Positions 1 to 8,845 of a stretch of 8,845 nucleotides of DNA are shown here, piece by piece. This DNA is from Thecamonas trahens ATCC 50062 (taxonomy: Eukaryota > Protista > Apusomonadida). The translations under genes were made by a program, and so were the position numbers. Below the pieces are notes generated by a model, which worked only from the letters and a program-made list of their open reading frames with translations, searched no databases and was not told where the DNA came from. Where the stretch lies: positions 1-8,845 of the forward strand of contig NW_013657583.1 of NCBI RefSeq assembly GCF_000142905.1, written 5' to 3'. How positions within the stretch are numbered: the first letter of the stretch is position 1; each line of letters opens with the position of its first letter.

Positions 1-93
1 AATTGGCACGGTGATCCACGTGTACAAGAGCGCCGTCCGATAGCCCGCGTACACACGAGATCAAGGTGAGAATTGGGCGCTCAGAGGGCGCCC

Positions 94-111
94 CGTCGTC
101 GTCGTCGTCGT
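94..111 (+). repeat. (CGT)6 microsatellite
   Basis: cgtcgtcgtcgtcgtcgt seen directly. Confidence 0.85.
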
Positions 112-297
112 CGCGCATCGTCGATCGGAGAGCCGACTGTGTCGAGGCCATCAGAGCGAGGTGGCAGCCGCTTTGATTCGCTCCGCGTCGCATGGCTGTT
201 GCCTACGGCCCGTACAACGGTGAGCAGACGAGTCTGGCGGCTACCCTCAGTGAGCTTGCTACTGCGCGATCGTCGCGGGGGCGGCCTCGTCGCCACG

Positions 298-914
298 CGG
301 CGCGAGATGGAGGCAGTGTTGGAGGCTGGCGGGCCGATGGCGCTCAGCGGGTACACGCGGGTGATGGCCAACGTCTTGCTGCCACATGTGATCTACGCGC
401 GCATCGGCTCCGGGCCGCTGGAGGAGCTCCTTGCCGAGGCCTTTCTCGTGGGCGGCCGCACGATCGGTCGTTGCAGCGGGAGCAGAAGCGGGCTGGCCGG
501 GCTCGGACGCCGCTGTTAGCTGAGCTCGGGCTCGGGCCTCGATCACGTGTGGGCGCTGAGCATCAAGCTGGCACTGGCGCGTGCGCTCGCCGAGGTCCAC
601 TCGATCACGGGCGGCGGGCACGACGTGGTGGTGGACCACAAGAGCGAACGGATGGTCATCAAGAGCAACCGGGGGACGATGGCGGTGGTGCCATCGGTGG
701 CGTACATGGCGCCGGAGCAGCTGCGCGGAGCCGATGAGGGTTTGAGGGCGACATGTTCACCTTTGGCACGCTCCTCTACGAGATGCTCATGCGGGCGCCG
801 GCGTTTGATGGCAGCAATGCCATGGGGGTCGGCCGTCAGGTCCTCACCAGCAACGCTGCTAGTGCGATGGCGGGTGATTCATCCGGCGGTGTTGGTCGGT
901 CGATCCGCTGGTGA
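298..914 (+). pseudogene. Degenerate eukaryotic protein kinase (TKL-like) relic or pseudokinase
   Basis: One frame gives REMEAVLE...GSGPLEELL (III-V like), TAG 517-519, WALSIKLALARALAEVHS (VIa like), VAYMAPEQL (VIII). After a frameshift near 738-740: GDMFTFGTLLYEMLMRAPAFDG (IX-X), TGA 912-914. No HRD or DFG motif. 5' limit uncertain. Confidence 0.68.
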
Positions 915-997
915 GGCCCATGGCGCAGGAGGCTGCAGATGTGCTGGCGGCAGCGAGGATGCGGACGCGGTGCTGGGGGGAGTAAAGGCGGTGGGTG

Positions 998-1930
998 TTA
1001 TGGGTGGCGGCGGAGGATGATGGGGGGGCGGTTGGAGAATACGGTGAGGAGGCGGTTGGGGTCGGAGGGGTGGGGGATGGAGAGGCCGGTGTGGTTGGCA
1101 ATGGTGATGCGAGTGGAGTTGTTGCGTGGGTGGGTGGAGGTGGAGCAGAGGGCGTGGAGCGAAAAGGGGAGGGAGTGGCGGGCGTGGAGGGCGTAGCCGG
1201 TGGGGGAGGGGTGCCACTCGAACGTCTCGTCGGAATCTGAGTGGGAGGCCAGGACGGGCAGCTGGCCATCCGCACTCGGCAGCGCAATCACACCCCGCAC
1301 ACTGTAGGTGTGGCCCTCCAGCACCTCACAGGAGGCATTGTCCGCGGTGTACCGCATGGCACCCATCTCGTCGTCCGCAGCATGCCACACCCGGATCGTG
1401 TCTTCCCACGACCACGAGACCAGGACAGGCAGCTGGCCATCCGCACTCGGCAGCGCAATCACACCATGCACATCGTCGGTGTGGCCCTCCAGCACCTCAC
1501 AGGAGGCACTGTCCGCGGTGTACCGCATGGCGCCCATCCCGTCGTCCGCAGCATGCCACACCCGGATCGTCCTGTCCCGCGACCACGAGACCAGGACCGG
1601 CAGCTGGCCATCTGTACTCGGCAGCGCAATCACACCCTCCACACCGCTGGTGTGGCCCTCCAGCACCTCACAGGAGTCCCTGTCCGCGGTGTACCGCATG
1701 GCGCCCGTCCCGTCGTCCGCAGCATGCCACACCCGGATCGTACTGTCCCACGACCACGAGACCAGGACAGGCAGCTGGCCATCCGCACTCGGCAGCGCAA
1801 TCACACCCTCCACATCGTCGGTGTGGCTCTCCAGCACCTCACAGGAGGCACTGTCCGCGGTGTACCGCATGGCGCCCGTCCCGTCGTACGCAGCATGCCA
1901 CACCCGGATCGTGTTGTCTCTCTCGACCAC
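998..1930 (-). other. Out-of-frame C-terminal part of the NLR (WD40 units 13-17 plus unique tail)
   Basis: 310-aa ORF continues the same repeat in a different frame; not an independent gene. Confidence 0.85.
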
Positions 1931-4900
1931 GAGACCAGGACAGGCAGCTGGCCATCCGCACTCGGCAGCGCAATCACACCCTCCACACCGTAGATGTGGC
2001 CCACCAGCACCTCACAGGAGGCCCTGTCCGCGGTGTACCGCATGGCGCCCGTCCCGTCGTCCGCAGCATGCCACACCCGGATCGTCCTGTCCCACGACCA
2101 CGAGACCAGGACAGGCAGCTGGCCATCCGCACTTGGCAGCGCAATCACACCCTTCACATACTCGGTGTGGCCCTCCAGTACCTCACAGGAGGCACTGTCC
2201 GCGGTGTACCGCATGGCGCCCTCTCCGTCGTCGGCAGCATGCCACACCCGGATCGTCCTGTCCCACGACCACGAGACCAGGACAGGCAGCTGGCCATCCG
2301 CACTCGGCAGCGCAATCACACCCCGCACATACTCGGTGTGGCCCTCCAGCACCTCGCAGGAGGCATTGTCCGCGGTGTACCGCATGGCGCCCGTCCCGTC
2401 GTCTGCAGGATGCCACACCCGGATCGTCTTGTCGGCCGACCACGAGACCAGGACAGGCAGCTGGCCATCTGCACTCGGCAGCGCAATCACACCATGCACC
2501 CTGCTGGTGTGGCCCTCCAGCACCTCACAGGAGGCAGTGTCCGCGGTGTACCGCATGGCCTCCGTCCCGTCGTCCGCAGGATGCCACACCCGGATCGTCC
2601 TGTCTTCCGACCACGAGACCAGGACCGGCAGCTGGCTGTCCGCACTCGGCAGCGCAATCACACCCTGCACATCGCTGGTGTGGCCCTCCAGTACCTCACA
2701 GGAGGCACTGTCCGCGGTGTACCGCATGGCGCCCGTCCCGTCGTCCACAGGATGCCACACCCGGATCGTCTCGTCCTCCGACCACGAGACCAGGACAGGC
2801 AGCTGGCCATCCGCACTCGGCAGCACAATCACACCCCGCACCCTGCTGGTGTGGCCCTCCAGCACCTCACAGGAGGCATTGTCCGCGGTGTACCGCATGG
2901 CGCCCGTCCCGTCGTCCGCAGCATGCCACACCCGGATCGTCCTGTCCCACGACCACGAGACCAGGACAGGCAGCTGGCCATCCGCACTCGGCAGCGCAAT
3001 CACACCATGCACCCTGCTGGTGTGGCCCTCCAGCACCTCACAGGAGGCAGTGTCCGCGGTGTACCGCATGGCCTCCGTCCCGTCGTCCGCAGGATGCCAC
3101 ACCCGGATCGTCCTGTCCTCCGACCACGAGACCAGGANNNNNNNNNNNNNNNNNNNNNNNNNNNNNNNNNNNNNNNNNNNNNNNNNNNNNNNNNNNNNNN
3201 NNNNNNNNNNNNNNNNNNNNNNNNNNNNNNNNNNNNNNNNNNNNNNNNNNNNNNNNNNNNNNNNNNNNNNNNNNNNNNNNNNNNNNNNNNNNNNNNNNNN
3301 NNNNNNNNNNNNNNNNNNNNNNNNNNNNNNNNNNNNNNNNNNNNNNNNNNNNNNNNNNNNNNNNNNNNNNNNNNNNNNNNNNNNNNNNNNNNNNNNNNNN
3401 NNNNNNNNNNNNNNNNNNNNNNNNNNNNNNNNNNNNNNNNNNNNNNNNNNNNNNNNNNNNNNNNNNNNNNNNNNNNNNNNNNNNNNNNNNNNNNNNNNNN
3501 NNNNNNNCGCAATCACACCCCGCACACTGTTGGTGTGGCCCTCCAGCACCTCGCAGGAGGCAGTGTCCGCGGTGTACCGCATGGCCTCCGTCCCGTCGTC
3601 CGCAGGATGCCACACCCGAATCGTGTTGTCCCACGACCACGAGACCAGGACAGGCAGCTGGCCATCCGCACTCGGCAGCGCAATCACACCATGCACCCTG
3701 CTGGTGTGGCCCTCCAGCACCTCACAGGAGGCATTGTCCGCGGTGTACCGCATGGCGCCCGTCCCGTCGTCCGCAGCATGCCACACCCGGATCGTCCTGT
3801 CCCACGACCACGAGACCAGGACAGGCAGCTGGCCATCCGCACTCGGCAGCGCAATCACACCCTCCACATCGTCGGTGTGGCCCTCCAGCACCTCGCAGGA
3901 GGCAGTGTCCGCGGTGTACCGCATGGCCTCCGTCCCGTCGTCCGCAGGATGCCACACCCGGATCGTGTTGTCCCCCGACCACGAGACCAGGACAGGCAGC
4001 TGGCCATCCGCACTCGGCAGCGCAATCACACCCCGCACACTGTTGGTGTGGCCCTCCAGCACCTCCACGCGTTCACCAGTTTGCACGTCCAGTACGTCCA
4101 CATTCTTCCAACATCCACCAGCAACCAGCGAGCCACTGATGTTGATGACATTGCCGGACGAGCCATCAAAGCGAAAGCGCTCAGCACCACGATGCGCAAC
4201 AGGGTCCACAGCTCTCGATGGAATGAGAGCCCCAGACGGGACATCTTCGCTCACAGCAGCAACCAGGTCCTTCACCGCTTTGGACGCGTTGTTATAGGCA
4301 AGTCGCGCAACGAGCTCGGTTTCGATTTGCGACTTGCCCTTCTCAATGATGTCGCGTGAGAGCGACAGCGCACGCTCGACCTCGTCAACGTCTTTGGCTC
4401 CTTCACATCCGAGGCGCACAACACAACGCAGATCGTTGAGGAGGCCACTAAGCGAGTCGTTTGCGCGGGCTTTCATCCATGGCCAGGAGAGAGCAACCGC
4501 AACGGCGGCATGGTTCGCTCCGGCTGCAATCATGTGCGAAATACCGTGGGTGACGATCCAGTCGGAGGCAGTATCAGATGTCATGGCCTTCGCAGCGGTA
4601 TGCGGCGTGGCGCCAGACGGAGGCAGCCCGGCGACAACGGCGAGATGACGGGCAGGAAGGGAAGGGATGTCGTCAAAGCATACCTCAAGCTGATGGCGAA
4701 TGTACTCGAGGTGCAGATCGTGCATCTCGATTACGGTTATGGCCCCGCCATCCGTGGCAACGACGCGCAGCAACGACGTGTTGGCGAGGGCATCGAGGGA
4801 CCTAGCAAACTTGATATTGCTTGCGTCGATCGCGGAGCGGAAGTTGGCGACGTCGATGGGCGCGTCTGATGGAAAGACGGCGAGCATGGCGTAAATAGTC

Positions 4901-6606
4901 AGCGCCACCTTGCGGACACGCTTGGGGATGGCACCGCTGAGGGTCCAAGTGATGATGTCAAAGATGCGGGCGTACTTGGCGTCCGATCCGCCGCAATCAT
5001 CGCGGTGCTCATCCATGGCAAGCTCAGTTGCATCTGCAGCGTCCTCAACAGCGTCGTCAAGCGCAGCCTCGCCAGAAATGGACGAGCCAAGGACGGCGAG
5101 GGCGAGGGCATGGCCACGGCAAAAGGTCGCGAGGGAGACGATGCGGGAATCGTTGAGAGCAAGGGTGTTTGCCCACTCAGGTGAGCCCTTGGCGAGGTAG
5201 TTGCGAAGGACAACAGCAGCGTCGTCCGGGCCAAAGGTGCCAAGCTTGATGGAGGAGGTGGTGTTGGTAGCAACAGCGGCGTTGCGCGAGGTGACGAGGA
5301 TGGCATGCGGGGCTGCGATGTGGTTGGTGAAGACGGAGGCCTGGCGGGTGGTCCACGCATCGTCGAGGATGAGCAGGATGCGGGTGCCGGCGGCGGCAAG
5401 GGACCGGGTCTTGGCAGCAAGGATACGTTGGAGGTCGTCGAGGTTGGCCTGAGTATCGACTGTGCAGCTCAGACCCTGCTTGAGAAAGTAAGACATGCGG
5501 CTGGTAAGAGCTGGGTTGGACGTATTGTCCTCACCAAGCGAGAGCCAGAAGACGGAGAAGACCGAAGTAATGGCGGGATGGATGGCGACATCGGCAGCGA
5601 GTGACGACTTGCCGACGCCACCGAGCCCGTTGACACCGACGACTGAGACGTTGTTCGCACCAAGAAGGACATTAATGACCGCATCACGAGTGTCAGGGAG
5701 CGGGTGGTATTCGGGTGGATTGAATGGCGGCGGCATGAGTAAAGGCAAACGCTCAATAGAGCAAGAGTCGCGCAAGACAGCGACGACAGCGTCTGCAACG
5801 CGGGAGACGAGATCGGAAAAGCTGTCGTGGCCGTTACGGTCGCCCTGGACGCACCCCCACTCAGGCAGCGAGTGTATGAGCTTGACTCGTTCACAGCGCG
5901 AGGAGTACCATGCTTTCACGTTCAGGTCCTCAGAGTGTTCAGCCTTGTGGACAGCACCCTTGGCGTGAGCAAGATCACCAAAGGCAGCGATAAGGTCAGG
6001 GCCAATCCAAGCCTTAGCCTGCTCCTCATGCACGGCGCCGGTGACACGCTCAATGACGTCGGCATCAGCGAGCCGGGCATCCCCCCAAACGCTATTGAAC
6101 GGCAAGGCTTCATGCATGAAGACAGGGATGATGACGGGGTTATTGTCGAGGGCAAAGCGCACCTCTTCCATGGCAAAGCCCGAGGCGAGGAGATAGGGCG
6201 AGACTGAAATAACAATGATGCGTGAGCCCTCAAGTAGGGCATGCACGTCGTCCATGCCACTGCACCTGACGCCGAACCAGTCCAGCCTGTCCACAAACGC
6301 CCTGACACCACGTCGTAAGAGCTCCCGCCGAACGTCGATCATGAAAGCCTTGTCGTGCGAGCCATGCGCGAGAAATACGTCATACTTCTTGATGGGGGGC
6401 GGCTTGATCGTAGAAGATGGAGCGGCTGGTGACGATGACGTCGCTTCAATTTGCATGTTCTGAGGGACTGCGGAGGAAGGGGTGGCCGAGCTGGCCGAGC
6501 TGGCGTTGGCGGGGGGGTGCGGGCGGGGGCGCTTGGCAGAACCCTGCTGCACTGGTGCGTGTGCAGGGCGCGGGGGGTCCCCTGTGTCCCCTGGGGCGGG
6601 GTCCAT
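998..6606 (-). CDS. TIR - NB-ARC - WD40-repeat STAND/NLR-like protein (about 1868 aa if frame is restored; as given, frameshifted at 1917-1924 and ending at the 1801 stop, about 1601 aa)
   Basis: ORFs 1801..6963 and 998..1930 join once 2 extra bases are removed. Motifs in order: TIR YDVFLAH...AFVD...IPVF; Walker A GLGGVGKS; Walker B ILLILDDAW; ILVTSR; CRGHALAL; MHD; GH...SxDxTIRVW repeats; TAA at 998-1000. Start chosen at ATG 6606 (MDPAPG) because the upstream in-frame stretch looks non-coding. Confidence 0.9.
1250..4065 (-). repeat. Tandem array of 171-bp units encoding 57-aa WD40 repeats (15 unit starts visible, 17 if gap size is right)
   Basis: Anchor gtggccctcc (EGH) or a one-base variant at 1310, 1481, 1652, 1823, 1996, 2167, 2338, 2509, 2680, 2851, 3022, 3535, 3706, 3877, 4048. 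Spacing is 171 except 173 (frameshift) and 513 across the gap. Confidence 0.97.
3138..3507. other. Assembly gap / undetermined bases (370 N)
   Basis: Run of N inside the repeat array. Confidence 0.99.
4200..4699 (-). other. Apaf-1-like helical domain/linker between NB-ARC and WD40
   Basis: WIVTHGISHMIAAG...VALSWPWMKAR...LLNDL resembles the post-MHD helical region of Apaf-1-type NB-ARC-WD40 proteins; position fits. Confidence 0.55.
4700..5700 (-). other. NB-ARC (AP-ATPase) domain with winged helix
   Basis: VVGVNGLGGVGKS (P-loop 5605-5628), VFWLSLG (RNBS-A-like), ILLILDDAW (5353-5379), ILVTSR (5284-5301), CRGHALAL (GLPL-like, GHAL at 5104-5115), LAVFPSD (RNBS-D-like), MHD (4717-4725). Boundaries approximate. 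Confidence 0.92.
5770..6387 (-). other. TIR domain
   Basis: KYDVFLAHGSHDKAFMIDVRRELLRRGVRAFVD (betaA-alphaA-betaB), IIVISVSPYLLASGFAMEEVRFAL (betaC/alphaC; Glu at 6163-6165 aligns with SxWCxxEL), VIIPVF (betaD), DLVSRVADAVVAVL (alphaE). Boundaries approximate. Confidence 0.88.
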
Positions 6607-7262
6607 GGGCACAGTGAGAGGTGTGCGGAGTGTGCGTTGCGTGTGACGGCGAGGGCGACAGTCGGCATTTGGGCGATTTTTTGGATATCGGGCGAGTGCC
6701 GGGGGAAGGGCCGGGGGAGAAGGTATGATTATTTCAATGAGAGTTAATTGATGGGGATGGGCATGATTAGTTGAACGAGAAATGATTGATGTGGCGATGG
6801 TGGGGCCAGGGGGGGTGCATGCAAGCAAGAAGGGTGTGTAGTTGGGCAAAAAGAAGAAAGAATGCGTTACTCGGTATTCCCGTGTGGTCCCCCACCACAG
6901 TACTAACCAAGCCTCATGCTGCTTGACTTCCGAGAGCGAGACGGGATCGGGTATTTTCAGCATAGGATGAACGCATTCGCTGTAAGAGTGTGCGTGTGGT
7001 AGTCATGTGGTGGAGGGCGAGGGCGCAGAGCGGTCGCAGAATGGGTTCCGACCAGGAGATGGCGATCGGGTGATTGAGGCAAGATGTGGCTGCTTCCGGC
7101 GCGATGCGGCTGTGAGTGGACTCTGATCTGTGAGTGGAATAGAGGTGCTTGCATTGCTGAGTCTCACCTTGTTCGGTTCCTTCTCTGCGATGTGGCGAGA
7201 ACCACAGCTCGCCGACGTCCACGGCCTCCGTACGTACATGCACAACTGCGCTGACAACCATC

Positions 7263-7580
7263 ATGGACTTTGAATCTCAAGGTCACCTCGGCTTTGTTGA
7301 CTCGATCGAGGATGCGCTCGAGACGCTTCCGGAGAGCCCGGCCGTTACCTTCTCCAACAACGTCTACGGCGTTTGGCGCGGTAGCGATCAGACGGCCGAC
7401 GGCGTTGTGGCTGCGGTGGCGTACAAGCGCCGCGACCTTGTGGCGATCAAGGTCGGTGGCTGCCCAAACGACAAGAACATCACTAGCAAGGCGTTGATTG
7501 CCATCGGCGGGTCATGCACCTTGCTCAAGTTGGTGGATGCATCGAGAACCGTGGCTGTGACCGACCAGTGGCCAGGGTGA
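7263..7580 (+). CDS. Hypothetical protein or gene fragment (105 aa)
   Basis: ATG in accATCATGG context, many G/C-ending codons, ordinary globular composition; no family recognised. Confidence 0.3.
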   Translation: MDFESQGHLGFVDSIEDALETLPESPAVTFSNNVYGVWRGSDQTADGVVAAVAYKRRDLVAIKVGGCPNDKNITSKALIAIGGSCTLLKLVDASRTVAVTDQWPG

Positions 7581-8845
7581 GGGAGCGATCGGCCAGTCGT
7601 ATGCAAGTTGAGATGGCGATGGAAGGCAGGCATCAGCTTTGTTGAGTGCACAGTGGGGGTTCATGGCAGCCAGCTCGCCGACGAGGGATCTGCGGTCGTC
7701 CGACTTGGGGGAGGTGAGGCCCATGGGACCGGGGTCGTTTGTGGTTGGCTTTCTAGCGTCGGCCTTGGGGGCGTCGGATGGGTGGCTGAGAAGGCGATTG
7801 GAGGCCGAGGCGAAGGTGAGGTGGTAGATCGAGCTGGAGAGGATGTCCAGCATACGTGTGTGTGTGCGTGGGCCGTGTGCTCGTTTGCTGGGAGCTGGCA
7901 CGGCATGTGTGGCTCGGGTGTGGCGATGGGAGAGGGGATGGCTGGGGTCCGACTGAGGCATGGATGTGGTGAGAGCGTGCGCGATCTGGCGACGACGAGT
8001 CTGTTGAGGGGTGATGGCATGTGCTCGCTGTCGTCGAGCAACCCGATGTCCCATTCGTCTGGGCGGAGCAGGTCAGGGCTTTGTTGCTTCCGCTGTTAGC
8101 TTGATAGCGAGCTGGAACCGCAGCGCGTTTTTGACGAAGGACGACGACGTTGCATCGACCACCAGGGCGGTGGTGTCCAGGCTGCTGTGCGGCTGTGGTG
8201 GACGGGCGTGGTCGGCTTGTTGTTTGCCCAGCCCATGAACGGCGTGGCAGTCGTCATGCCAGCGGTAACGTCGGCGAGGAGGACGATGGGGCTGGTGTCA
8301 GCAGCACTCGGCTGCGAGCGAGGGTGGGGTCGGCATGCGCAACGCCTCGATGGCAGAGATCAGAGATCAGATTGCGGCCGCGGGGCCATGATGCGTGTGC
8401 GGGTGGCGGCGATGAGGACAACGAGCGAGGGACATGGGTGGGGTTGGCAAGGTACGTCGTTGTCAGGCAGAGGTAGCACGACACCCAGCAAAGAAGAGCT
8501 GGCCGGCTGACCTCGCTTGATCGAGGACGATCCGGAGGACTGGCTGAGGCGGTGGGCAACTGTGGGGGAGATCGGGATAAAGGAGGACAGAGTGTTAATG
8601 CGCGATGAGGGGTGATTGGATTGCAAGGGACGGCGCGGGTGGGCATGGTTTGTTGCGCAGCAGCAGGTGATGGGGTTGATGGGATGGATGGTCGGGCGTG
8701 GTGGTTGCAGGAGAGCGATGACGGTTGTGTGGCGGATGTGCGAGGCATAGTTGTGCTCGGCGCATGTGTCTGGGTCTCATCTTCAGCAGCTGGAGGGCGC
8801 AGGCAGCGCCATCTGGCAATGTGTGGATGGCAGGCAGGTTGGGGC

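What the first reader, a model, noticed from the sequence alone, without database searches (positions are those of the whole stretch)
998..6606. Candidate diversifying immune receptor: TIR-NB-ARC fused to a homogenised, hypervariable WD40 array
Seen: TIR, complete NB-ARC motif set, and a WD40 array nearly identical at DNA level. Known: plant TNLs are TIR-NB-ARC-LRR; Apaf-1 is CARD-NB-ARC-WD40 with divergent repeats; Podospora HET-D/HET-E are HET-NACHT-WD40 with highly conserved repeats that reshuffle specificity; TIR-STAND-WD40 architectures occur in some bacteria. Inference: this gene combines a TIR effector and NB-ARC switch with an HNWD-style recombining sensor in what looks like a eukaryotic genome. 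It may be a poorly described non-self-recognition/cell-death system with its own repeat family.
Basis: partly seen in the sequence, partly recalled or inferred. Interest (0 to 1): 0.88.

Follow-up and report, generated by a model that had tools for sequence, protein, structure and literature searches.

The report
Protist TIR–NB-ARC receptor, hypervariable WD40 array
This small scaffold of the flagellate Thecamonas trahens carries one copy of a species-specific family of at least 12 immune-receptor-like genes, and its sensor is built from near-identical repeats that differ only at a few surface positions, as in fungal self/non-self recognition genes.

Summary
On the minus strand, 6606 to 998, lies one intronless gene encoding TIR_2, NB-ARC and an array of 171-bp (57-aa) WD40 units. 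All catalytic and switch motifs are present.

- **Gap:** the N gap (370 bases) is exactly in frame and in repeat register (513 = 3 x 171), so it hides about two units.
- **Break:** a +2-base slip at 1917-1923 shifts the frame. The original frame stops at 1801. Four intact units follow in the new frame.
- **Origin:** the window is a whole scaffold of Thecamonas trahens ATCC 50062 (apusomonad). The database name "ribosome assembly protein 4" is wrong.
- **Family:** at least 12 paralogous loci share the unit, and nothing outside this species does.
- **Variation:** it is concentrated at five codons in the D-A loop and B-C turn (pN/pS about 2.9 against 0.46-0.49 elsewhere). The unit backbone is 94-97% identical within and between loci. 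This is the fungal HNWD pattern.
- **Extra findings:** three TIR cassette classes (31-39% identical) sit on an 84-91% identical chassis. A 5S rRNA gene lies just upstream at five loci. Six of seven loci lie at scaffold ends.

An immune or cell-death function is inferred, not shown. I rate it a new variant of a known kind.

The parts
6859..6978 (-). 5S rRNA gene, 253 bp upstream of the ATG at 6606. The long ORF that starts at 6963 is therefore not coding here.
   Evidence: Rfam RF00001, 104.9 bits, model positions 1-120 of 120. The same arrangement occurs at L001, L002, L006 and L007.
998..6606 (-). Whole coding region as it stands: ATG at 6606 (alternative ATG at 6456), N gap at 3138-3507, frameshift at 1917-1923, stop of the shifted frame at 998.
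6391..6606 (-). Low-complexity N-terminal leader, residues 1-72. The second ATG at 6456 matches the annotated start of paralogs P0004 and P0005.
   Evidence: About 90-95% identical to L001 as far as about 6466, then falling.
6100..6390 (-). TIR domain, class A cassette.
   Evidence: Pfam TIR_2, 37.9 bits. Aligns to plant AtTIR 3jrn. AF2 pLDDT 75-90.
6163..6165 (-). Codon of the putative catalytic glutamate, residue 148.
   Evidence: Aligns with the Glu of the AtTIR motif. Glu in 48 of 61 non-gap rows of alignment A1, including all Thecamonas TIR classes.
5748..6465 (-). Divergent TIR-plus-linker cassette with sharp borders. Identity to paralog L001 falls from about 0.9 to about 0.45-0.65 and returns to 1.00.
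4717..5737 (-). NB-ARC module (NBD, HD1, WHD): P-loop 5605-5637, Walker B 5353-5376, MHD 4717-4725.
   Evidence: Pfam NB-ARC, 60.5 bits. Motif positions. Near-invariant columns in A1. pLDDT above 90.
4207..4716 (-). Helical arm between NB-ARC and the WD40 array, equivalent to HD2 of Apaf-1.
   Evidence: AF2 helices at pLDDT about 90. Foldseek top hits are Apaf-1 1z6t, 3shf and 3sfz over 530-570 columns.
3508..4065 (-). WD40 array, first visible part: 3.3 units of 171 bp.
3138..3507 (.). Assembly gap of 370 N. In frame and in repeat register at its stated length; would hold 28 bases plus two units.
1211..3137 (-). WD40 array, second visible part: 11 units, the last one degenerate.
   Evidence: AF2 of seven units gives pTM 0.79 and matches 7- and 8-bladed propellers.
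1917..1923 (-). AG run that holds two extra bases, the frameshift. Anchor spacing here is 173 instead of 171.
1801..1803 (-). Stop codon reached in the original frame after the frameshift.
   Evidence: ORF 1801..6963.
998..1210 (-). Low-complexity C-terminal tail and stop, read in the shifted frame.
   Evidence: Homology to L001 continues to 672.

Best explanation
The window is a complete small scaffold of the apusomonad Thecamonas trahens. It carries one copy of a lineage-specific multigene family of STAND/NLR-type proteins. The protein has four parts:
- an N-terminal TIR domain with the catalytic glutamate;
- an Apaf-1-like NB-ARC switch (NBD, HD1, WHD, HD2);
- a C-terminal WD40 array of 57-aa blades, 15 visible plus about 2 in the gap.

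Shown here:
- The blades are about 91% identical in DNA.
- Variation is confined mainly to five codons (31, 32, 34, 54, 56) in the D-A loop and B-C turn, the ligand-binding top face of a propeller.
- The rest of the unit is homogenised within and between at least four loci.
- The TIR-plus-linker is an exchangeable cassette with three classes.

Inferred:
- Unit exchange by unequal crossing-over or gene conversion, followed by selection on the top-face residues, generates new binding specificities, as in the fungal HNWD genes.
- Ligand binding releases the closed ADP state. The NB-ARC domain then oligomerises, the TIR domains are brought together and cleave NAD+, and the outcome is cell death or a defence signal.
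- This copy is interrupted by a +2 frameshift, so it is a truncated allele, a young pseudogene or an assembly error.
For: - Organism and family.
- Domains and motifs.
- Fold: TIR, NB-ARC and arm model with pLDDT 80.1 and pTM 0.70. Best structural match is ADP-bound Apaf-1 (E 2e-16, TM 0.65 on the target), followed by plant NRC, RPP1 and ZAR1, then CED-4 and Dark. Best sequence match in the PDB is plant NRC1 and NRC2 (E 2e-9).
- Repeats: period 171 at 91% identity. pN/pS is 2.8-2.9 at the seven or eight most variable codons and 0.46-0.49 at the other 50. This holds for 12 window units and for 32 units from four loci.
- Diversity: 32 distinct five-residue combinations among 35 units.
- Strand map: positions 31, 32 and 34 fall in the D-A loop and the start of strand A; 54 and 56 fall in the B-C turn. 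These are the same two pairs flanking a conserved residue as HNWD codons 7/9 and 25/27.
- Homogenisation: the backbone is 94-97% identical within and between W, L001, L002 and L005, and some backbones are identical in different loci. The terminal units instead pair by position.
- TIR cassettes: 31-39% identical between classes against 84-91% for the NB-ARC and arm region, with sharp borders.
Against: - No functional, expression or population data exist for this family. Immune function, NADase activity and oligomerisation are inferred from homologues.
- The high-pN sites were chosen by amino-acid entropy, which inflates their pN/pS. No likelihood site model was run.
- This is a short-read-era draft assembly with an N gap and a frameshift. 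Unit order and number in this copy are therefore uncertain, and some homogeneity could come from collapsed assembly.
- The original frame ends at 1801, so this copy may not make a full-length protein.
Confidence: 0.7

Rival explanations
1. The frameshift is real. This copy is a young pseudogene or a truncated allele that ends after about 13 blades, while other family members are the working genes.
For: - Anchor spacing of 173 and a stop at 1801.
- The P0002/P0003 locus model also runs into an out-of-frame reading of a unit.
- Fungal HNWD genes are likewise described as genetically fragile, with pseudogenes that keep intact repeats.
- The four units after the shift are still intact, so the event would be recent.
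Against: - The extra bases lie in a dinucleotide run, a typical sequencing or assembly error site.
- L001, L002 and L003 show only in-frame length variants: 168, 174 and 186.
Confidence: 0.35
2. The gap, the frameshift and part of the unit order are assembly artefacts of a collapsed repeat. The true gene is intact and may differ in unit number.
For: - An N gap inside the array.
- An isolated 8.8-kb scaffold.
- Six of seven family loci end a scaffold.
- N runs inside the other loci.
Against: - The gap is in exact register.
- Units on either side carry distinct hypervariable combinations.
- The same unit family recurs on 12 scaffolds, so the family and its pattern are real even if this array is imperfect.
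Confidence: 0.45
3. It is what the databases call it: ribosome assembly protein 4 (Rsa4/Notchless), a conserved housekeeping WD40 protein.
For: - Source names.
- Foldseek of the WD40 model lists Rsa4 propellers among many others.
Against: - TIR and NB-ARC domains occupy the first 630 residues.
- There are at least 12 paralogs with private 57-aa units.
- No close relative exists outside the species.
- The annotated model starts inside the TIR domain and splices over the gap and the frameshift.
Confidence: 0.01
4. The gene is bacterial, either a contaminant or a recent horizontal transfer, because TIR-NB-ARC-WD40 is a common bacterial architecture.
For: Hits P0019, P0021, P0022 and P0024 (TIR_2, NB-ARC, APAF1 WHD/C, WD40) and P0020 (SIR2, NB-ARC, WD40; Pirellulales) at 28-31% identity. 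Named bacterial TIR-WD40 proteins appear.
Against: - Paralogs lie on scaffolds of 100-530 kb next to actin, kinase, cyclin, P450 and filamin genes.
- A 5S rRNA gene is linked at five loci.
- Identity to bacterial proteins is at most 31%.
- In an NB-ARC tree the family groups with P0014, P0016, P0017 and Thecamonas P0018, apart from the large cluster that holds the identifiably bacterial WD40-bearing hits (midpoint root, mostly unnamed taxa).
- An ancient transfer of the core cannot be excluded.
Confidence: 0.05
5. The family is a STAND signalling system with a non-defence role, such as conspecific allorecognition or a stress-triggered, Apaf-1-like death pathway, rather than pathogen sensing.
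For: - The closest fold is Apaf-1.
- The closest evolutionary analogue, HNWD, works in allorecognition.
Against: - An endogenous conserved ligand would not favour hypervariable binding positions and many paralogs.
- No evidence either way on cell fusion in Thecamonas.
Confidence: 0.2

Closest known systems
Podospora anserina HNWD/NWD family (HET-D, HET-E, HET-R) and other fungal NLRs with highly internally conserved repeats
   Same: - WD40 units about 85% identical in protein.
- A multigene family sharing one unit pool.
- A backbone homogenised within and between loci.
- Two pairs of hypervariable residues flanking a conserved residue, in the D-A loop and B-C turn.
- Frameshifted or pseudogene copies that keep intact units.
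   Different: - NB-ARC instead of NACHT.
- A canonical TIR instead of HET, which is only a remote TIR relative.
- A 57-aa unit with an extra hairpin instead of 42 aa.
- An apusomonad, not a fungus.
- No RIP.
- No genetics or isolate data.
Apaf-1 / Dark / CED-4 apoptosome family, including the amphioxus TIR-NB-ARC members
   Same: - Best structural match over NBD, HD1, WHD and HD2 (1z6t, 3shf).
- NB-ARC followed by a helical arm and WD40 propellers.
- TIR replaces CARD in one amphioxus homologue.
   Different: - About 16% identity in the structural alignment, and no Apaf-1 hit by sequence at E of 1 or below.
- Pfam APAF1_C and WHD models not matched.
- Repeats near-identical rather than divergent.
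- At least 12 copies rather than one.
- TIR rather than CARD.
Plant TIR-NLRs (TNLs such as RPP1, ROQ1) and NRC helper NLRs
   Same: - TIR with the catalytic Glu, closest to a plant TIR by sequence (3jrn).
- NB-ARC closest by sequence to NRC1 and NRC2.
- MHD motif present.
   Different: - WD40 sensor instead of LRR plus C-JID.
- An HD2 arm of the Apaf-1 type.
- Unrelated lineage.
Bacterial TIR (or SIR2, DUF4062)-NB-ARC-WD40 STAND proteins
   Same: Same three-part architecture. Some bacterial WD40 arrays are also highly repetitive (2ymu, 5yzv).
   Different: - 28-31% identity.
- The bacterial proteins match the APAF1_C and WHD Pfam models, and this one does not.
- A separate cluster in the NB-ARC tree.
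- Only weak TIR hits to PADLOC and NCBIfam defence models.
Animal TeTIR-NACHT-WD40/TPR proteins (TEP1, NWD1, NWD2)
   Same: A TIR-type NADase effector joined to a STAND ATPase and WD40 repeats in a eukaryote outside plants.
   Different: - NACHT, not NB-ARC.
- An extended TIR-like domain, not a canonical TIR_2.
- Divergent repeats.
- Single-copy conserved genes.

Membership tests
NB-ARC (AP-ATPase) STAND/NLR superfamily | NB-ARC domain above the curated threshold | tested here: met
   PF00931, 60.5 bits against 23.5.
NB-ARC (AP-ATPase) STAND/NLR superfamily | Walker A, Walker B, sensor-1 Arg and MHD His present | tested here: met
   Motifs at residues 324-334, 411-418, 437-442 and 628-630. They fall on near-invariant columns of an 81-sequence alignment.
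NB-ARC (AP-ATPase) STAND/NLR superfamily | Effector, NOD and repeat-sensor tripartite layout, with the NBD-HD1-WHD fold | tested here: met
NB-ARC (AP-ATPase) STAND/NLR superfamily | Nucleotide-dependent oligomerisation on ligand binding | not testable with these tools
   Needs biochemistry or cryo-EM.
Plant TNL | N-terminal TIR with the catalytic Glu | tested here: met
Plant TNL | LRR sensor with C-JID/post-LRR domain | tested here: not met
   The C-terminus is WD40. There are no LRR hits.
Apaf-1 family | N-terminal CARD | tested here: not met
   TIR_2 instead.
Apaf-1 family | NB-ARC followed by an HD2 arm and WD40 propellers | tested here: inconclusive
   The fold matches Apaf-1 best. The Pfam APAF1_C and WHD models are not matched, and there is no sequence hit to Apaf-1 in the PDB.
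HNWD-type NLRs with highly conserved repeats | Internal repeat identity of about 85% or more over at least 100 aa | tested here: met
   Mean amino-acid identity 85.9% and nucleotide identity 90.7% over 12 units. Criterion taken.
HNWD-type NLRs with highly conserved repeats | Excess non-synonymous change at top-face loop positions | tested here: met
   pN/pS 2.8-2.9 against 0.46-0.49. Loop assignment. Counting method only; sites were chosen by entropy.
HNWD-type NLRs with highly conserved repeats | Concerted evolution of units across paralogous loci | tested here: met
   Backbone identity is equal within and between loci, backbones are shared between loci, and edge units pair by position.
HNWD-type NLRs with highly conserved repeats | HET effector, NACHT NOD and a 42-aa unit | tested here: not met
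   TIR_2, NB-ARC and a 57-aa unit.
HNWD-type NLRs with highly conserved repeats | Repeat-number and sequence polymorphism between isolates; a role in incompatibility | not testable with these tools
   Only one strain is in the collections.
Bacterial TIR-NB-ARC-WD40 proteins | Same architecture, in a prokaryotic genome | tested here: not met
   The architecture is shared, but the loci are eukaryotic. Identity is at most 31%.
Rsa4/Notchless (the database name) | Conserved orthologue: a single WD40 propeller with no NTPase or TIR domain | tested here: not met

The most novel reading that the evidence does not exclude
Thecamonas has independently evolved a germline diversification engine for intracellular receptors. 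On this reading, a dozen or more 5S-rDNA-linked, scaffold-terminal (possibly subtelomeric) loci exchange WD40 blades and whole TIR effector cassettes by ectopic recombination. That would give a free-living bacterivorous flagellate, sister to animals and fungi, a combinatorial non-self recognition repertoire convergent with fungal HNWD genes.
Probability: 0.3. Interest if true: 0.8.

Novelty: new variant of a known kind. Interest (0 to 1): 0.62.

Why it matters
NLR-type receptors with self-homogenising, hypervariable repeats have been worked out in fungi, and similar arrays are seen in bacteria. Finding the same evolutionary design in an apusomonad has two consequences:
- It shows the design is a recurrent solution rather than a fungal peculiarity. 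Here it is built from a canonical TIR, an Apaf-1-like NB-ARC and a private 57-aa WD40 blade.
- It places a TIR-STAND receptor repertoire in the sister lineage of animals and fungi.

It also gives a tractable case for asking what a bacterivorous flagellate needs to recognise, for example giant viruses, intracellular bacteria or conspecifics. The swapped TIR cassettes and the linked 5S genes suggest how such families spread and recombine.

On the practical side, the public gene models and names for the family are wrong.

Tried and rejected
- **Paralog loci not retrieved:** exact-sequence look-ups of P0003, P0002 and P0006 found no record, so those loci were not analysed at DNA level.
- **Bacterial genome scan failed:** Named bacterial relatives come only.
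- **Literature:** one search with loose terms returned only generic NLR papers. Searches for Thecamonas with "TIR domain", "NLRs" or NB-ARC found nothing on this family.
- **Defence-system libraries:** PADLOC and NCBIfam gave only weak TIR hits (ThsB, retron TIR) far below cut-offs, so no membership of a known bacterial defence system is claimed.
- **Rest of the window:** Pfam on nine flanking ORFs found nothing, there are no tRNAs, and the bacterial promoter and terminator scan was empty and is not relevant to a eukaryote.
- **Telomeres:** no telomere-type repeats at any scaffold end, so a subtelomeric position is not shown.
- **Annotated introns rejected:** the introns in the annotated model were considered and rejected. 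They only bridge the N gap and the frameshift.
- **L004 origin unresolved:** the neighbours of the nearest foreign relative (L004) gave no informative domains, so whether it is eukaryotic or bacterial is unresolved.
Full report
**1. What is in the window**

The gene lies on the minus strand. A mechanical ORF runs from 6963 to 1801 straight through the N run.

Its first 100 or so codons overlap a full-length 5S rRNA gene at 6978-6859 (Rfam, 104.9 bits). The alternative is the ATG at 6456, whose context matches the annotated start of paralogs P0004 and P0005.

Pfam on window:3508-6606:- gives three domain types:
- TIR_2, residues 77-169, 37.9 bits against a cut-off of 28.
- NB-ARC, residues 307-513, 60.5 bits against a cut-off of 23.5.
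- WD40 repeats, which are also above cut-off in the two downstream pieces.

No other protein domain, tRNA or RNA family was found in the flanks.

**2. The gap, tested first**

The only N run is 3138-3507, 370 bases. I located the conserved start of strand C of every unit. Successive anchors are 171 bases apart, and the two that flank the gap are 513 = 3 x 171 apart.

At its stated length the gap is therefore in frame and in exact repeat register (370 = 28 + 2 x 171). It would hold the rest of one unit plus two whole units. An arbitrary estimate would fall in register once in 171 times. Continuity is therefore likely, although the hidden letters remain unknown.

**3.

One spacing is 173. Two extra bases sit in an AG run at 1917-1923. 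The original frame then reads an out-of-frame version of the unit and stops at 1801. The remaining four units, the degenerate last blade, a low-complexity tail and the stop at 998 are in the other frame.

The downstream units are intact. The event is therefore either recent or a sequencing or assembly error, and I could not decide between these.

**4. The repeat array**

- Tandem Repeats Finder reports period 171 at 91% matches on both sides of the gap.
- Fourteen anchors are visible. With the first unit and the degenerate last one, that makes 15 visible blades, or about 17 with the gap.
- Twelve clean units are on average 90.7% identical in DNA and 85.9% identical in protein.

Variation is concentrated. 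Numbering the unit from the Ile that opens strand C, the high-entropy codons are 6, 11, 20, 31, 32, 34, 54 and 56. At these, pN is about 0.49 and pS about 0.17, a ratio of 2.8-2.9. At the other 50 codons the ratio is 0.46-0.49. The same result holds for 32 units pooled from four loci. Choosing sites by amino-acid entropy biases this contrast upward, so it is a counting result and not a likelihood test.

A single-sequence AlphaFold model of seven units was obtained (pLDDT 75.9, pTM 0.79; only one of five models was good). It matches 7- and 8-bladed WD40 propellers and gives this strand map per unit:

| Element | Unit positions |
|---|---|
| Strand C | 1-5 |
| Extra hairpin | 6-8 and 14-16 |
| Strand D | 22-26 |
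| Strand A | 33-39 |
| Strand B | 48-53 |

Positions 31, 32 and 34 therefore lie in the D-A loop and the start of strand A. Positions 54 and 56 flank the conserved Asp of the B-C turn. This is the same geometry as the positively selected codon pairs 7/9 and 25/27 of the Podospora HNWD repeats, which map to the top face of the propeller (Paoletti et al. 2007, PMC1805685).

**5. Where it comes from**

The N-terminal 741 residues match a 1489-aa protein of Thecamonas trahens ATCC 50062 at 100% identity. That protein's longest contig is 8845 bases, so the window is the whole scaffold. Eleven further Thecamonas proteins on other scaffolds also match.

The public model is faulty in four ways:
- It is named "ribosome assembly protein 4".
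- It starts at a Met inside the TIR domain.
- It splices over the N gap.
- It splices over the frameshift.

These introns are artefacts, and the gene reads as intronless.

An exhaustive HMMER search of 1.84 billion representatives found only six proteins at E of 1e-30 or better. Five are Thecamonas paralogs. The sixth is P0014, a metagenomic protein 36% identical with a TIR_2, NB-ARC and LRR architecture.

Below that, identity is 31% or less. Those hits are:
- NB-ARC-TPR proteins.
- TIR-NB-ARC proteins.
- A second, divergent Thecamonas TIR-NB-ARC protein (P0018).
- Many TIR-, SIR2- or DUF4062-NB-ARC-WD40 proteins, of which the few that carry names are bacterial.

The 57-aa unit at 74% identity or more occurs only in the 12 Thecamonas proteins. 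The next hits are generic WD40 proteins at 45% or less.

Paralog loci lie beside ordinary eukaryotic genes for actin, kinases, cyclin, P450 and filamin. This rules out contamination.

**6. The switch and the effector**

The switch:
- The P-loop, Walker B, sensor-1 Arg, a GLPL-like motif and MHD are all present. They fall on the near-invariant columns of an 81-sequence alignment.
- An AlphaFold model built with that alignment has pLDDT 80.1 and pTM 0.70, with NB-ARC and arm above 90.
- Its best structural match is ADP-bound Apaf-1 (1z6t, E 2e-16, TM 0.65 on the target, 562 columns) and full-length murine Apaf-1. Plant NRC2-4, RPP1 and ZAR1 follow, then CED-4 and Dark.
- By sequence alone the best solved relatives are plant NRC1 and NRC2 (E 2e-9). 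Apaf-1 is not found.

The effector:
- The TIR domain aligns to the plant TIR protein 3jrn. Its second Glu in the motif at residues 144-149 falls on the catalytic Glu position.
- That column is Glu in 48 of 61 rows, including all Thecamonas TIR classes.

**7. Family dynamics**

*Unit backbone.* Outside the hypervariable codons, the backbone is 94-97% identical both within and between the window, L001, L002 and L005. Some backbones are identical in different loci. The terminal unit of the window is instead closest to the terminal unit of L001. Homogenised interior units with position-faithful edge units are the classical signature of unequal exchange. Thirty-two of 35 units carry a distinct five-residue combination, and one combination recurs in three loci. 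L003 is an older branch, at 82-84%.

*TIR cassettes.* The TIR-plus-linker behaves as a cassette. Identity between the window and L001 changes along the gene as follows:

| Window region | Identity to L001 |
|---|---|
| 6945 to about 6466 | about 0.9-0.98 |
| about 6465 to 5748 | 0.42-0.67 |
| 5691 to 5572 | 0.98-1.00 |

Three TIR classes (A: the window and P0002/P0003; B: P0004, P0005, P0008, P0009; C: P0006, P0007) are 31-39% identical to each other. Their NB-ARC and arm regions are 84-91% identical.

**8. Context**

- A 5S rRNA gene lies 250-450 bases upstream, on the same strand, at the window, L001, L002, L006 and L007. It is absent at L003.
- Six of seven loci lie within 0-4 kb of a scaffold end with the 5' end facing outward. 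The seventh is 12.6 kb from an end.
- The 2 kb upstream of the gene is itself duplicated among loci.
- No telomere-type repeat is present.

The scaffold ends may therefore reflect either subtelomeric positions or assembly breaks in repeated DNA.

**9. Mechanism**

Shown by computation: the architecture, intact motifs, the Apaf-1-like closed fold, top-face hypervariability, backbone homogenisation across loci, and the cassette structure of the effector.

Inferred from what is established for Apaf-1, plant TNLs, TIR NADases and HNWD genes:
- A ligand binds the propeller top face.
- The ADP-bound closed state opens.
- The NB-ARC domain oligomerises.
- The TIR domains are brought together and cleave NAD+.
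- The result is cell death or a defence signal.

New specificities would arise by exchange of blades within and between loci, followed by selection. I put 0.7 on this overall reading. The architecture and the evolutionary mode are close to certain. The immune or non-self function is at about 0.6.

**10. Comparison with what is known, and novelty**

- The design is that of the fungal HNWD and NLR genes with highly conserved repeats. The parts differ, however: TIR rather than HET, NB-ARC rather than NACHT, and a 57-aa rather than a 42-aa unit. It is therefore not a member of that family.
- It is an NB-ARC STAND protein. It is Apaf-1-like in fold but fails the CARD criterion, and it is TNL-like in effector but fails the LRR criterion.
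- TIR-NB-ARC-WD40 is common in bacteria.
- TIR-NB-ARC has been noted in an amphioxus Apaf-1 homologue.
- TeTIR-NACHT-WD40 has just been described in animals.

I found no paper that links Thecamonas or apusomonads with TIR, NLR or NB-ARC proteins of this kind. That library lacks most subscription journals, so a survey table elsewhere may list these genes.

Verdict: a new variant of a known kind, interest 0.62.

**11. Limits**

- No spliced model was needed.
- Pieces on either side of the gap and of the frameshift were searched separately, by reference.

Noticed in passing
window 6859-6978 (-); L001 1257-1376; L002 1433-1552; L006 1548-1674; L007 5431-5550: A full-length 5S rRNA gene sits 250-450 bp upstream of the receptor gene, on the same strand, at five paralogous loci. 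The 5S gene and the receptor gene seem to duplicate together.
   Followed up: partly
window (whole scaffold); L001, L002, L003, L005, L006 starts; L007: Six of seven family loci lie within 0-4 kb of a scaffold end with the 5' end facing outward, and the seventh is 12.6 kb from an end. No telomere repeats are present, so this is either a subtelomeric position or an assembly break in duplicated upstream DNA.
   Followed up: partly
window 5748-6465: The TIR-plus-linker is a sharply bounded divergent cassette inside a chassis that is 90-100% identical to paralog L001. Three TIR classes exist in the family, and all keep the catalytic Glu.
   Followed up: yes
window 998-6606 (public models P0001, P0274): The public gene models start inside the TIR domain and place introns over the N gap and the frameshift. 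They are named ribosome assembly protein 4 on WD40 similarity alone.
   Followed up: yes
window 6725-6800: A 38-bp tandem repeat (2 copies, 78% matches) in the AT-richer spacer between the 5S gene and the ATG.
   Followed up: no
L004 2251-5478: The nearest relative outside Thecamonas (P0014, 36% identity) is a TIR_2, NB-ARC, LRR protein on a 7.9-kb metagenomic contig of unknown organism. Close NB-ARC relatives therefore carry LRR or TPR sensors instead of WD40.
   Followed up: partly
P0018 (AMSG_05240, scaffold of 456,871 bp): A second, much more divergent TIR-NB-ARC protein of Thecamonas (29% identity) with no recognised C-terminal repeat domain.
   Followed up: no
P0015 (AMSG_11016, same scaffold as P0006): A 123-aa class A TIR fragment, 98% identical to the window's TIR, is annotated on the scaffold that carries a class C paralog. 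It may be a stray cassette or a fragmented gene model.
   Followed up: no
L001 4197-6264; L002 4404-5607; L003 4787-5486: Arrays of the paralogs contain in-frame unit length variants (168, 174 and 186 bp). Only the window's array, and apparently that of P0002/P0003, has an out-of-frame variant.
   Followed up: partly
window 1-8845: G+C is about 66% in the WD40 array and the downstream flank but 58-60% over the TIR and NB-ARC half. The GC skew changes sign near 1500 and 4500.
   Followed up: no
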